Source: Anthoceros angustus (lineage: Eukaryota > Plantae > Anthocerotophyta). From it: a DNA stretch of 64,000 nucleotides. Positions within the stretch are counted from its first letter, which is position 1. Every line of letters begins with the position of its first letter. This document shows, in pieces, positions 30,170 through 32,801 of the stretch. The stretch spans positions 620,001 to 684,000 of the forward strand of contig VJWM01000107.1 of the NCBI GenBank assembly GCA_010909165.1, given 5' to 3'. Position numbers and translations under genes: made by a program. Under the pieces are notes generated by a model. That model made no database searches. It worked only from the letters and a program-made list of their open reading frames with translations, and was not told the origin of the DNA.

Positions 30170-32801
30170 TCAAGCTCTTTTCACAGGGTCTACATTAAGC
30201 TCGTGCAACAAGTCGGACATGTTAGACCTGCTACTTGAAGGACGTGATGAACTAGAGCTGCCGGCTTGCGATTTGTTCAATGCTCTCGGGGTAGGAGTCG
30301 AACACCCGAAATCACTGCCTCCAGTAACAGACTTTTGAATGTTGACAACCGGCTCACTTACATTTCTGCCACCAAGGCATCTGAGTTAACGTCGGGAGAG
30401 TGTACGCATAATTCAGTCGTTCGTATAAGGTATGTGAGTTACCTGGGATCTTTGAAAAACAAACTGACGCGTTCGTCTGGCAGACACCAGTGTTCCTTGT
30501 CTTCCCGCATTTGAAGCATACACAGAAAGAGAGCATACTACATTCCACAAACAGTAAGTTGTGTGGATTAGGAATCATCTACTAGAACAAAAGGAGAAAG
30601 GAGGTTAGGGCGGGGATGTTAAGATTTCGTGGACCAACCAACCTGTAGCACACCAAGTTTGGAAATTGAGCTTGAGTTTCGACCAAGGTAGCTACTGGAT
30701 TCGCTATCACTGTCATTCTGGTGAAGTCCTACTTCATGAGACTTTATGTCTTCAGCGGGGCCATTATCTTGAACACACTGCCAAATGACGTCTGCTAATA
30801 TTAACTTCGACCTTACAAAAACAAGAGCTTCTACTGTGAGTCTGTCAGTGATGCACTATGAGGAGATAACCTAGTACGGATCACAAATTCCACAGAAGTG
30901 TACTGCACCGGATTTTACTAACCTGAATGGCATAGTGTACCAGCTTCCCAGAAAAATCCTGCAACCCCTGATTGAAGCCAGTCAGTGCAACATCCCATAG
31001 AGAGTAATCTGCGGTGGCAACTCGGAGCCTAGAATAACAGTTCCAGCCCTTTACCTTCAACAATGTGTTGCAAGGGTGACCGTCGTCCGTTTGCTTATCT
31101 GACAAATGGTCGTGACGAAACATCATCAGTTATCTGGAAAGAGAAGAGGTACCAGTTATCTAGGAAAATACCTGTGGAGAACAGGGAAGAAGGTTTCAAT
31201 GTATCCAGGAGCAGCACAGCCTCTAGTTCATGTTCACCAAGTCCAAGAACATGTAGCGTTGAAGATCCTGCAGCAGGGATGAACGCAGCAACAGTCAGAA
31301 TCTGACCATTGTTAATTCATCAACTACGGTCTGACTGCTTGATGAGTACCGATGGGAGATAGAGCTACACTCTAGAGAAAAGGAGCCTCCTCAGGTGTCC
31401 CTGAGAACCATTCAGATAGGATGGGAGGACAGAAGTGCAACTGCTGAGGAACATGTTCACGACATGAGCAACCAACCTAGGGCGACGAGTTCAGCAATCG
31501 GTAGAAGCACACTCTCTGGTGGACCGGTGCTGTCCGATCCATCCTGTTGGGAAAGTCATCCAAACCACCAACCAACAATCAAAATAACAGAAACTTACAC
31601 AGTGCTTGTGCCAGCATGAACGTGGCCGAGCACCTGACTAGGTAGATGCACCCTCTCTCTCTTTCAGCACTTCACGCAACTAGATCAAGAGGCAAGGTTC
31701 TCAGGTTCAGCGGCAAAGGTACTTTCACAGGAGCCCGGTGAGATGCTATGCTCGGAACATTCGCATGTGGGGAACACGGCAGGTAGTTACATCAGTGATG
31801 GAGAGTTGGAAGTCACTTTGTCCAGCCAAGGGCTGTCGCAACTGCACATTGCAAGCCATGAGCTTCTCTTGCCAACGCGGCAGCGTGAGATGTCTTTCAT
31901 ACTTGTACAGCTTTCCTCGGATGCTCATGACGACTCCACCTCTTGTTCCTGCACTGCGAATCTGCGCAATTCCACAACCAAGCCAGGTCAGATCCAACCA
32001 TCTCTCGCAGGCACTCGCTCAACAAAACCCAGATCCCGAAACGCCTAAGAAAGCGCACCAGATAGCTAGCCTCCATGAGTCGAGAGGGCGACAATCCCTT
32101 GTTGGTACCCTGCAGCAGGGAGACTGCATTCATAGCCACGGACATGTAGGGCAGCAAGGAATCCAACCTAGAGCCACCGCAAACAAATCCGTGCGTCAGC
32201 AGAGCTCCCCAATTCAAGAACCCTGGAGGGAGATACCGGAAGAGGGGCACATACTGCGTCAAGAAACCCTCCAGGCGCGCAGTCGCATCCGCCTGCGACA
32301 CCTTGGACACGCTCTGCAGCGCGCGATCCAATTCAGCGAATGGTTCACGCCCCCCCAAGAAAGCACAACCCAAAACCCCAATCGCCCAGCTCCCACCTCA
32401 TTGTAGGCCTGCGCCTCCAGCTCTTCTTGAAACGCGACGATGTCATTGATCACCCGGAGGGCCATATCCAGCGCGCCCTGCCGGAAGGCAACACGAAGGA
32501 GGCCATGGTGAAATCGAGGGCCAGCACAGCGAGGCCTACAAGATGCCGGACGGCACGAAGCGCCCTCCCTTACCCGCAATACTGTGTTCCCGTGCAGCAC
32601 ATAGTGCACGCACATGTCCACCGGCAGGCTCAGAACCTGCAGCCTGGACTCCAACTTCTTGTGCAAGTGCTCCAGCTGGCGCTGGCCGCGGAAGCGTACG
32701 TGGAGGCGGGAGAAGAGCGAGGAGAGTGCGCGCTGGGCCACCGCCTCGAATGTCTTGCGCAGCAGCACGGATCCGGCGTACAGCGCGGCAGCCGACCCCA
32801 T
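30170..32801 (-). CDS. Yrb30-like RanGTP-binding protein (PF05508-type), multi-exon
   Basis: Confident exons: 32801-32574, 32477-32397, 32313-32255, 32167-32059, 31961-31791, 30537-30443 and 30380-30170, plus several small, less certain exons between 31660 and 30643. Blocks LEHLHKKLESRLQVLSLPVD...GNTVL, LDSLLPY...LSPSRLMEAS, W.E and LGVLQYALFLCMLQ...H..LPDERVSLFF match my recollection of yeast Yrb30 in order. Confidence 0.78.

What the first reader, a model, noticed from the sequence alone, without database searches (positions are those of the whole stretch)
30170..32801. Intron-rich land-plant homolog of the 'fungal' RanGTP-binding protein Yrb30
Seen in sequence: the ORF track splits this gene into anonymous pieces, but GT-AG splicing joins them into one protein. 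Compared with my recollection of S. cerevisiae Yrb30, four blocks match in order. (1) QLEHLHKKLESRLQVLSLPVDMCVHYVLHGNTVLRGAL vs IDQLKFKLESRMAIVSSAIDLIKLVAARGNTNLQ. (2) LDSLLPY...LSPSRLMEASYL vs IEEITPL...VSPGLLLKASDFV. (3) A beta-rich segment with RWQE. (4) LGVLQYALFLCMLQMREDKEHWCLPDERVSLFF vs L.LLEYIIRLSSLQ.NDQKSILEVSDERLSIYL. Established: Yrb30 (PF05508) binds RanGTP, inhibits RanGAP-stimulated hydrolysis and was described as fungal; I know of no Arabidopsis counterpart. Inference: non-seed plants may have an uncharacterised Ran regulator, from ancient retention or fungus-to-plant transfer. The many introns and native neighbours argue against contamination.
Basis: partly seen in the sequence, partly recalled or inferred. 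Interest (0 to 1): 0.88.

Follow-up and report, generated by a model that had tools for sequence, protein, structure and literature searches.

The report
Yrb30-type Ran-binding gene in hornwort-like plant
This is a real, spliced and transcribed plant gene for a relative of yeast Yrb30, a regulator of the nuclear-transport switch Ran once thought to exist only in fungi. Related genes are already filed, unstudied, for mosses, clubmosses, ferns and green algae.

Summary
On the minus strand, 32801..30170, lies a 12-exon gene of 1317 coding bases (438 codons plus stop). RNA-derived contigs from the same organism and three relatives support every joint, and all 11 introns are GT..AG.

They were searched one at a time, by reference.
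- Exon 1 alone weakly hits Pfam PF05508 (E 0.007).
- Exons 1, 4 and 11 align in order to a fungal Yrb30-family profile.
- Whole orthologues pass Pfam's cut-off of 25 bits: Sphagnum 53.5, Trebouxia 77.6.
- Plant and fungal profiles align over 234 columns (E 7e-8).
- The predicted fold best matches the fungal Yrb30 cluster (TM 0.68).

Relatives occur in mosses, lycophytes, ferns, a zygnematophyte and chlorophytes. No named hit was a seed plant. The tree follows the species tree, so this is old vertical inheritance, not a recent transfer from fungi.

The predicted protein has a four-helix bundle, a split PH-like domain that resembles Ran-binding domains, and a C-terminal export-signal-like motif. 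Ran binding itself is untested.

This is a new member of a known family. Databases already tag the orthologues with PF05508. I found no paper on them.

The parts
32574..32801 (-). Exon 1, coding part from the ATG at 32801 (76 aa). It holds helices 1-2 of the N-terminal bundle and the conserved LESRL..LPVDMC..HGNT block.
   Evidence: Spliced contig joint 32476/32573. Pfam PF05508 E 0.007, 16 bits, profile positions 30-80. hhalign to the fungal profile at 42-80, E 2.9e-4. About 86% identical to Sphagnum P0001 over the matched stretches of exons 1-2.
32397..32477 (-). Exon 2 (27 aa), GALDMALRVINDIVAFQEELEAQAYNE
   Evidence: Joints. AG/GT sites and reading frame. Aligned to P0001.
32255..32313 (-). 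Exon 3 (59 nt)
   Evidence: Joints 32313/32397 and 32165/32253.
32168..32254 (-). In-frame 87-nt intron. It is removed in X1, X6 and X16 and retained in the contig from relative X2. If retained it would add 29 aa.
   Evidence: tables 5 and 8. Sphagnum P0001 has a 29-residue gap at exactly this place.
32059..32167 (-). Exon 4 (helix 4 of the bundle, LDSLLPY...LSPSRLMEASYL)
   Evidence: hhalign to the fungal profile at 166-178, E 4.3e-3.
31791..31961 (-). Exon 5 (57 aa): the first strands of the PH-like domain, KLYKYERHLTLPRWQEK
   Evidence: Joints 31961/32059 and 31542/31790. tblastn to orthologues gives 48-60% identity. The corresponding strands are 171-206 in the model of the orthologue.
31477..31543 (-). 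Exon 6
   Evidence: Alternative joints in relatives (31542->31633, 31540->31722) point to other isoforms.
31172..31267 (-). Exon 7 (SSTLHVLGLGEHELEAVLLLD, strands of the PH-like domain)
   Evidence: 82% identical to P0001 residues 240-267.
31055..31098 (-). Exon 8
30923..30958 (-). Exon 9
30643..30777 (-). Exon 10: an acidic, Ser-rich loop predicted to be disordered, which splits the PH-like domain. It ends in KLGVLQ.
   Evidence: pLDDT is below 50 for the matching residues 292-329 of the orthologue. Most listed amino-acid differences to sister species fall here.
30443..30537 (-). Exon 11: the C-terminal helix of the PH-like domain (YALFLCMLQMREDKEHW..DERVSLFF)
   Evidence: hhalign to the fungal profile at 521-545, E 0.018. 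Helix 321-352 of the model has pLDDT 89-94.
30170..30365 (-). Exon 12, coding part: a Ser/Pro-rich tail, then the conserved motif MSDLLHELNV (pattern of a class-1a nuclear export signal), then the TGA stop.
   Evidence: The motif sits at the same place in all embryophyte orthologues tested.

Best explanation
This is a native, expressed gene of a non-seed land plant, probably a hornwort. It encodes a 438-residue member of the Yrb30 / PF05508 'RanGTP-binding protein' family.

- an N-terminal bundle of four long helices;
- a PH-like beta-sandwich whose closing helix is separated from the strands by a disordered acidic, Ser-rich loop;
- a disordered Ser/Pro tail ending in a conserved motif that fits a leucine-rich export signal.

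The likely mechanism is inferred by homology to yeast Yrb30p and was not shown here. The protein would bind GTP-bound Ran, probably through the PH-like domain, which resembles RanBP1-type Ran-binding domains. It would shield Ran from RanGAP-stimulated hydrolysis, and it would shuttle, being exported by exportin-1.

The gene was inherited vertically within green plants and appears to have been lost before or within the seed plants.
For: Gene and expression:
- 12 exons, all joints seen in spliced contigs of four runs, GT..AG at all 11 introns, open frame of 1317 nt.

Family membership:
- Exon 1 alone hits PF05508 at E 0.007.
- The Sphagnum orthologue P0001 covers all the main exons on the window by tblastn and scores 53.5 bits on PF05508 against a cut-off of 25. 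Algal relatives score 77.6 and 84.9 bits, the latter over profile positions 19-300 of 304.
- Plant and fungal profiles align over 234 columns, probability 94.5%, E 7e-8.
- Window exons 1, 4 and 11 align collinearly to the fungal profile.
- Atlas feature search scores 0.96 to 'Ran-specific GTPase-activating protein 30'. Atlas shape search puts the same cluster first, TM 0.68 over 190 residues.

Fold:
- All top solved-structure matches of residues 166-354 are PH-like. Ran-binding domains lead: RanBP3 Z 11.8, rmsd 2.9, 117 aligned; RanBP2 RanBD4 Z 10.9.

Descent:
- The tree splits fungi from green plants (100/100), with chlorophytes (99/98) and embryophytes (89/98) as groups.

Export motif:
- The Phi-x3-Phi-x2-Phi-x-Phi pattern is conserved at the C-terminus.

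Constraint:
- Among the listed differences to sister species, 13 are synonymous and 13 are not. Six of the 13 amino-acid changes fall in the disordered-loop exon.
Against: - No biochemical evidence for Ran binding exists in any plant.
- Identity to fungal members is only about 21-26%, so function may have drifted.
- Even in yeast, deletion of YRB30 gives no obvious phenotype (my recollection of Braunwarth et al. 2003, J Biol Chem 278:15397; the paper is not held in the library).
- The window's own protein never passed Pfam's cut-off. Only single exons were tested, because the joined protein was deliberately not built.
- The PH-like domain is not resolved as a Ran-binding domain. EVH1, Dcp1 and ordinary PH domains score within about 1-1.5 Z of the best Ran-binding domain.
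- Neither hmmscan nor a PDB profile search links it to RanBD by sequence.
- The structure models are of middling confidence (mean pLDDT 66.7 and 67.4).
- The export signal is a pattern match only.
- Fungal sampling in the tree is a single class, Dothideomycetes.
Confidence: 0.8

Rival explanations
1. The protein is a true PF05508 homologue, but in plants it no longer acts on Ran. The PH-like domain would bind another ligand, such as a phosphoinositide, a proline-rich peptide or another small GTPase, and the protein would act as a generic adaptor.
For: Structure searches do not separate Ran-binding domains from EVH1, Dcp1, PTB and lipid-binding PH domains, with Z 8.5-10.4 against 10.2-11.8. The Ral-binding PH domain of Exo84 is also among the hits. 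Identity to fungi is low. No sequence-level RanBD signal was found.
Against: The blocks best conserved between plants and fungi lie at the bundle/PH junction and in the PH-domain's closing helix (SPSRL, W[KQ]E, DE..FF). That suggests a retained common interface. The only family member with biochemistry binds RanGTP (from memory).
Confidence: 0.15
2. The N-terminal four-helix bundle is a HeLo / NLR-CC-type membrane-acting or cell-death module. The protein would then be an immune or cell-death effector, with the PH-like domain as its regulator.
For: The bundle (residues about 8-143 of the orthologue) aligns with the Sw-5b N-terminal domain (Z 10.5), the barley MLA13 CC (Z 9.7) and the Arabidopsis NRG1.1 CC-R (Z 8.9). 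UniRef names the Elliptochloris homologue 'Prion-inhibition and propagation HeLo domain-containing protein'. There is a faint Rx_N hit on a fungal member, E 0.15.
Against: All these Z values lie below the level of about 13 that the tool gives as noise for helical bundles. IncA and designed bundles score equally. Pfam finds no HeLo, HELL or RPW8 domain in any member, even at E up to 10. The N-terminal 15 residues are modelled with low confidence.
Confidence: 0.04
3. The locus is a contaminant or a recent fungus-to-plant transfer.
For: The family is overwhelmingly fungal in databases: 1815 fungal-type hits to one Dothideomycete query, and the Atlas clusters are Ascomycota.
Against: There are eleven short GT..AG introns, and transcripts with the same splicing occur in four related organisms. 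The flanking genes are plant-type, including a convergent UQ_con E2 gene. The closest relatives are moss, lycophyte and fern proteins, 83-86% identical in exons 1-2 for the closest. The branch to fungi is very long and the green-plant topology follows the species tree.
Confidence: 0.01

Closest known systems
Saccharomyces cerevisiae Yrb30p (YGL164C) and the fungal PF05508 'Ran-binding' family, annotated as 'Ran-specific GTPase-activating protein 30'
   Same: - Same Pfam family by profile score of the orthologues.
- Same order of conserved blocks: LES..I/L..P.DM...GNT.L; LPY/PLI...SPSRL; W[KQ]E; L.ML/LCMLQ...DE..FF.
- Same predicted shape for the PH-like half, TM 0.68.
- Similar length to yeast Yrb30p (438 aa against about 440 aa, the latter from memory).
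- A C-terminal export-signal-like motif. Yrb30p was reported to carry a functional NES (from memory).
   Different: - Only about 21-26% identical to fungal members.
- The Dothideomycete members sampled are much longer (600-840 aa), with long inserts and tails.
- The plant gene has 11 introns.
- No biochemical or genetic data exist for any plant member.
- The yeast sequence itself could not be obtained for a direct comparison.
RanBP1-type Ran-binding domain (RanBD, Pfam PF00638) of RanBP1/Yrb1, RanBP2, RanBP3/Yrb2 and Nup50/Nup2
   Same: Both are PH-like beta-sandwiches closed by a C-terminal helix. RanBDs are the top solved matches: RanBP3 2y8g_B Z 11.8, rmsd 2.9, 117 of 118 residues; RanBP2 RanBD4 Z 10.2-10.9. 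From memory, Yrb30p competes with Yrb1p for RanGTP, which would fit a RanBD-like binding mode.
   Different: - No detectable sequence relation.
- The domain is split by a disordered loop of about 40 residues before the closing helix.
- Other PH-like classes score nearly as well.
- From memory, Yrb30p inhibits RanGAP-stimulated hydrolysis whereas RanBP1 co-activates it.
Four-helix-bundle CC / CC-R / HeLo domains of plant NLRs and fungal HET-s/MLKL-like proteins
   Same: The N-terminal four long helices superpose on the MLA13 CC, the NRG1.1 CC-R and the Sw-5b N-terminal domain at Z 8.9-10.5.
   Different: The scores are within the noise range for helical bundles. There is no sequence signal and no evidence of membrane activity.

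Membership tests
PF05508 / Yrb30 RanGTP-binding protein family | Score on the Pfam PF05508 profile at or above the gathering cut-off (25 bits) | tested here: inconclusive
   For the window itself only single exons were scanned, because the exons were not joined. Exon 1 scores 16 bits, E 0.007, profile positions 30-80; the other exons give nothing. By proxy the feature is met: the Sphagnum orthologue P0001 scores 53.5 bits, Selaginella 50.9, Trebouxia 77.6 and P0019 84.9.
PF05508 / Yrb30 RanGTP-binding protein family | Collinear conserved blocks shared with fungal members | tested here: met
   Window exons 1, 4 and 11 align to fungal profile positions 42-80, 166-178 and 521-545 with E 2.9e-4, 4.3e-3 and 0.018. 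Plant and fungal profiles align over 234 columns, E 7e-8.
PF05508 / Yrb30 RanGTP-binding protein family | Same predicted fold as fungal Yrb30 proteins | tested here: met
   Tested on the orthologue's residues 151-375. The best Atlas shape match is the fungal 'Ran-specific GTPase-activating protein 30' cluster (PF05508 in 93% of members), TM 0.68, 190 aligned, rmsd 3.7.
PF05508 / Yrb30 RanGTP-binding protein family | Binds Ran-GTP and inhibits RanGAP-stimulated GTP hydrolysis | not testable with these tools
   This needs biochemistry.
PF05508 / Yrb30 RanGTP-binding protein family | Functional nuclear export signal and exportin-1-dependent shuttling | tested here: inconclusive
   A motif fitting Phi-x3-Phi-x2-Phi-x-Phi (MSDLLHELNV in the window) is conserved at the C-terminus of all embryophyte orthologues tested. 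This is a pattern match only.
RanBP1-type Ran-binding domain (PF00638) | Sequence profile match to RanBD | tested here: not met
   hmmscan of residues 160-375 of the orthologue at E up to 10 shows no Ran_BP1 hit. A profile of the region against all PDB sequences finds nothing at E up to 10.
RanBP1-type Ran-binding domain (PF00638) | PH-like fold closest to solved RanBDs | tested here: inconclusive
   RanBDs rank first (Z 10.2-11.8), but EVH1, Dcp1 and PH domains follow within about 1-1.5 Z.
HeLo / NLR CC-type four-helix bundle | Sequence or structure match clearly above the background for helical bundles | tested here: not met
   Z 8.9-10.5 lies below the level of about 13 that the tool gives as noise for helical bundles. 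No Pfam HeLo, HELL or RPW8 hit was found.

The most novel reading that the evidence does not exclude
The Yrb30 family would be an ancient eukaryotic Ran effector, not a fungal invention. In this reading its Ran-binding module is a cryptic, split RanBD-like PH domain fused to an NLR-CC/HeLo-like four-helix bundle. Green algae and all non-seed land plants would have kept it, and the seed-plant ancestor would have lost it. That would mean an unrecognised branch of Ran regulation in bryophytes, lycophytes and ferns.
Probability: 0.15. Interest if true: 0.6.

Novelty: new member of a known kind. Interest (0 to 1): 0.42.

Why it matters
Yrb30 was described in 2003 as a Ran modulator 'exclusive to fungi' (from my memory of that paper). 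This gene and its orthologues show the family runs through green algae, bryophytes, lycophytes and ferns. No named hit here came from a seed plant.

That gives plant cell biologists an untested Ran-cycle component in tractable models such as Physcomitrium, Ceratopteris and Anthoceros. It also offers a clean case of gene loss on the way to seed plants.

The predicted PH-like, RanBD-resembling domain suggests how the whole family might bind Ran, and that is testable.

The practical weight is limited. Yeast YRB30 has no clear loss-of-function phenotype, and the plant proteins are already in databases with the Pfam tag.

Tried and rejected
- **Joined protein.** By instruction, the 12 exons were never joined into one protein for any search, fold or tree. 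Exons were searched by reference, and the Sphagnum orthologue P0001 stood in for the whole protein.
- **Single-exon Pfam scans.** Apart from exon 1, single exons gave no PF05508 hit. Exon 12 gave only a chance-level eIF-4B hit (E 0.24). Exon 5 against the fungal profile gave only a spurious alignment.
- **Sequence link to RanBD.** I looked for one with hmmscan at E up to 10 and with a PDB profile search. Neither found anything. A profile-profile test against RanBD could not be run because no RanBD sequences could be fetched. My remembered resemblance between the RanBP1 'KLFRF...LPEWKERG' stretch and the plant 'KLYKF...LPRWQEK' stretch therefore stays an untested lead.
- **HeLo idea.** UniRef's name for one algal homologue prompted it. 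There is no Pfam support, and the structural Z values are within helical noise.
- **Literature.** Searches for Yrb30, YGL164C, PF05508, IPR008812 and the UniProt name found no relevant paper. The original JBC paper is not held.
- **Ran complex prediction.** Not attempted, because no Ran sequence was available from the session's sources.
- **Spurious hit.** P0014 (1446 aa) matches mainly the intron-encoded part of the read-through query. I disregarded it.
- **Organism.** Run and organism names were coded, so the species was not determined. The 'hornwort' label rests on other agents' notes and on the gene being about equally distant from moss, lycophyte and fern orthologues.
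Full report
**Observation**

The minus strand between 32801 and 30170 carries a multi-exon gene.

I laid contigs of four public runs on 29900-33300. Run X1 matches at 100% and is probably the same organism. X2, X6 and X16 are three related organisms at about 90-95% identity. The contigs skip eleven stretches whose ends read CT..AC on the plus strand, which is GT..AG on the gene's strand. 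Spliced contigs must derive from RNA, so the gene is transcribed and spliced.

A script that kept the exons separate confirmed AG/GT at every boundary and a total of 1317 coding bases, which is 438 codons plus TGA. The exons are:
- 32801-32574
- 32477-32397
- 32313-32255
- 32167-32059
- 31961-31791
- 31543-31477
- 31267-31172
- 31098-31055
- 30958-30923
- 30777-30643
- 30537-30443
- 30365-30170

An in-frame 87-nt intron (32254-32168) is removed in three organisms but retained in X2's contig. Relatives also show alternative joints between exons 5 and 6.

**What was deliberately not done**

Exons were searched singly, by reference. For whole-protein analyses I used the closest database orthologue as a stand-in.

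**Family assignment**

Evidence from the window's own exons:
- Exon 1 alone gives a weak but specific hit to Pfam PF05508 'RanGTP-binding protein' (E 0.007, 16 bits, profile 30-80). The other exons are too short.
- Against an alignment of twelve Dothideomycete family members (A4), window exons 1, 4 and 11 align in the right order to positions 42-80, 166-178 and 521-545. Exon 5 alone does not.

Evidence from orthologues:
- An exhaustive HMMER search with the straight translation of exon 1, intron 1 and exon 2 (no stop inside) found 23 proteins. The best is a 441-aa Sphagnum magellanicum hypothetical protein, P0001, 86% identical over the matched stretches.
- tblastn of P0001 on the window aligns it along the whole gene, with breaks at the RNA-defined introns. 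That includes a 29-residue gap at the 87-nt intron.
- Whole orthologues pass Pfam's 25-bit cut-off for PF05508: Sphagnum 53.5, Selaginella 50.9, Adiantum 53.0, Trebouxia 77.6, and an unnamed chlorophyte-like protein 84.9 over profile positions 19-300 of 304.
- The plant alignment A2 matches A4 by hhalign with 94.5% probability, E 7e-8, over 234 columns.
- The ESM-Atlas feature search puts 'Ran-specific GTPase-activating protein 30' (the UniProt name of Yrb30) first, at 0.96.

**Distribution and descent**

Named relatives come from these groups:
- mosses: Sphagnum, Ceratodon, Physcomitrium
- lycophytes: Selaginella, Diphasiastrum
- ferns: Ceratopteris, Adiantum
- the zygnematophyte Mesotaenium
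- trebouxiophyte and chlorellalean algae: Trebouxia, Elliptochloris, Myrmecia, Chlorella sp. A99

All but two (P0035, P0036) of the proteins returned carry a precomputed PF05508 tag and are named 'hypothetical' or 'uncharacterized'. No named hit was a seed plant, though several hits have no source name. This is suggestive only: the word-indexed searches are shallow, and the exhaustive one used a 135-residue query.

A maximum-likelihood tree has 23 rows and 466 columns, with P0001 standing in for the window gene. It separates fungi from green plants (100/100). It recovers chlorophytes (99/98) and embryophytes (89/98), with ferns grouped and the three mosses forming a clade together with one unnamed sequence. 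This pattern indicates vertical descent.

The window gene is about equally distant from moss, lycophyte and fern orthologues. Other agents' notes on this genome call it a probable hornwort. I did not verify the species.

The flanks are plant-like. A convergent ubiquitin-conjugating-enzyme-fold gene lies at about 29135-29650. Its sequence looks like the SUMO E2 type to me.

**Anatomy and likely mechanism**

An AlphaFold2 model of P0001 was built from 19 aligned sequences, with mean pLDDT 66.7. It shows:
- four long helices (5-147);
- a short linker helix;
- seven strands (171-288);
- a disordered acidic, Ser-rich loop (292-329);
- a confident long helix (321-352, pLDDT about 90);
- a disordered tail.

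A second model of residues 151-375 gave the same fold.

Every high-scoring solved structure for residues 166-354 is PH-like. Ran-binding domains come first:
- RanBP3, Z 11.8, rmsd 2.9, 117 aligned
- Nup2, Z 10.9
- RanBP2 RanBD4, Z 10.2-10.9
- Yrb2, Z 10.2
- Yrb1, Z 9.7

EVH1, Dcp1 and ordinary PH domains follow within about 1-1.5 Z. The PH-like fold is therefore firm. The RanBD subclass is only a lead, and there is no sequence-level link.

The best shape match in the Atlas is the fungal Yrb30 cluster itself, at TM 0.68.

The last ten or so ordered residues fit the class-1a export-signal pattern. This holds in the window (MSDLLHELNV) and in every embryophyte orthologue tested.

From memory, Braunwarth et al. 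2003 (J Biol Chem 278:15397; not held in the library) reported that Yrb30p:
- binds Gsp1-GTP;
- competes with Yrb1p;
- inhibits Rna1p-stimulated hydrolysis;
- carries a functional NES;
- was thought to be fungus-specific.

Putting this together, the most likely mechanism is Ran-GTP binding through the PH-like domain, protection of Ran-GTP from RanGAP, and exportin-dependent shuttling. All of these functional steps are inferred, not shown.

**Rivals**

- The function may have drifted to another ligand of the PH-like domain (about 0.15).
- The N-terminal bundle superposes on NLR CC-type bundles: Sw-5b Z 10.5, MLA13 Z 9.7, NRG1.1 Z 8.9. UniRef labels one algal homologue 'HeLo'. But the scores lie in the noise range for helical bundles and Pfam finds no such domain, so I give this about 0.04.
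- Contamination or a recent transfer from fungi is effectively excluded by the introns, the transcripts in four organisms, the neighbouring genes and the tree.

**Novelty and verdict**

The gene is a new, unannotated-in-the-literature member of a known family. Its orthologues already sit in NCBI and UniProt with the Pfam tag, so the 'fungal only' label is outdated in databases, though I found no paper saying so.

The interest is moderate. It lies in a candidate Ran regulator that non-seed plants keep and seed plants apparently lack, and in a testable structural idea for how the family binds Ran.

Noticed in passing
window 29135-29650 (+): A convergent neighbouring gene with a ubiquitin-conjugating-enzyme fold (UQ_con, E 3e-20 and 6e-5 on two exon pieces). 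Its sequence looks like a UBC9/SCE1-type SUMO E2. One 3375-nt X1 contig runs from this gene's side into the 3' end of the Yrb30-like gene, so the two 3' ends abut or overlap.
   Followed up: partly
window 32168-32254 (-) and 31544-31790 (-): Signs of alternative splicing. The in-frame 87-nt intron is retained in relative X2's contig, which would add 29 aa. Extra joints (31542->31633, 31540->31722) and unspliced contigs over 31514-31751 suggest other isoforms between exons 5 and 6.
   Followed up: partly
window 32861-32921: A GC-rich hexamer-like microsatellite, (GGGCTC/GGGCTG)n on the gene's strand, lies in the 5' leader just upstream of the ATG. The reads tool skipped it as a repeat.
   Followed up: no
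P0031 (Selaginella moellendorffii, 767 aa): A database model that fuses PPR repeats (PF01535, PF13041 and others) to the PF05508 protein. A second Selaginella entry (P0005, 359 aa) lacks the PPR part, so this is probably a gene-model fusion and not a real architecture.
   Followed up: no
Orthologue P0001 residues 8-143 (window exons 1-4): The N-terminal four-helix bundle superposes on plant NLR CC-type domains (Sw-5b SD, MLA13 CC, NRG1.1 CC-R) at Z 8.9-10.5, which is within the noise range for helical bundles. UniRef calls the Elliptochloris homologue a HeLo-domain protein.
   Followed up: partly
P0008 and P0016 clusters: Exon-sized 'hypothetical proteins' of 53-161 aa on metagenome contigs (NCBI, JGI, ENA, Logan) are 79-93% identical to exons 1 and 2. 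These are pieces of this eukaryotic gene family called as prokaryote-style ORFs in environmental assemblies.
   Followed up: no
window 34234-38773: An earlier first-reader note (s1-636915) places a MASE1-sensor hybrid histidine kinase gene just upstream. I did not examine it.
   Followed up: no
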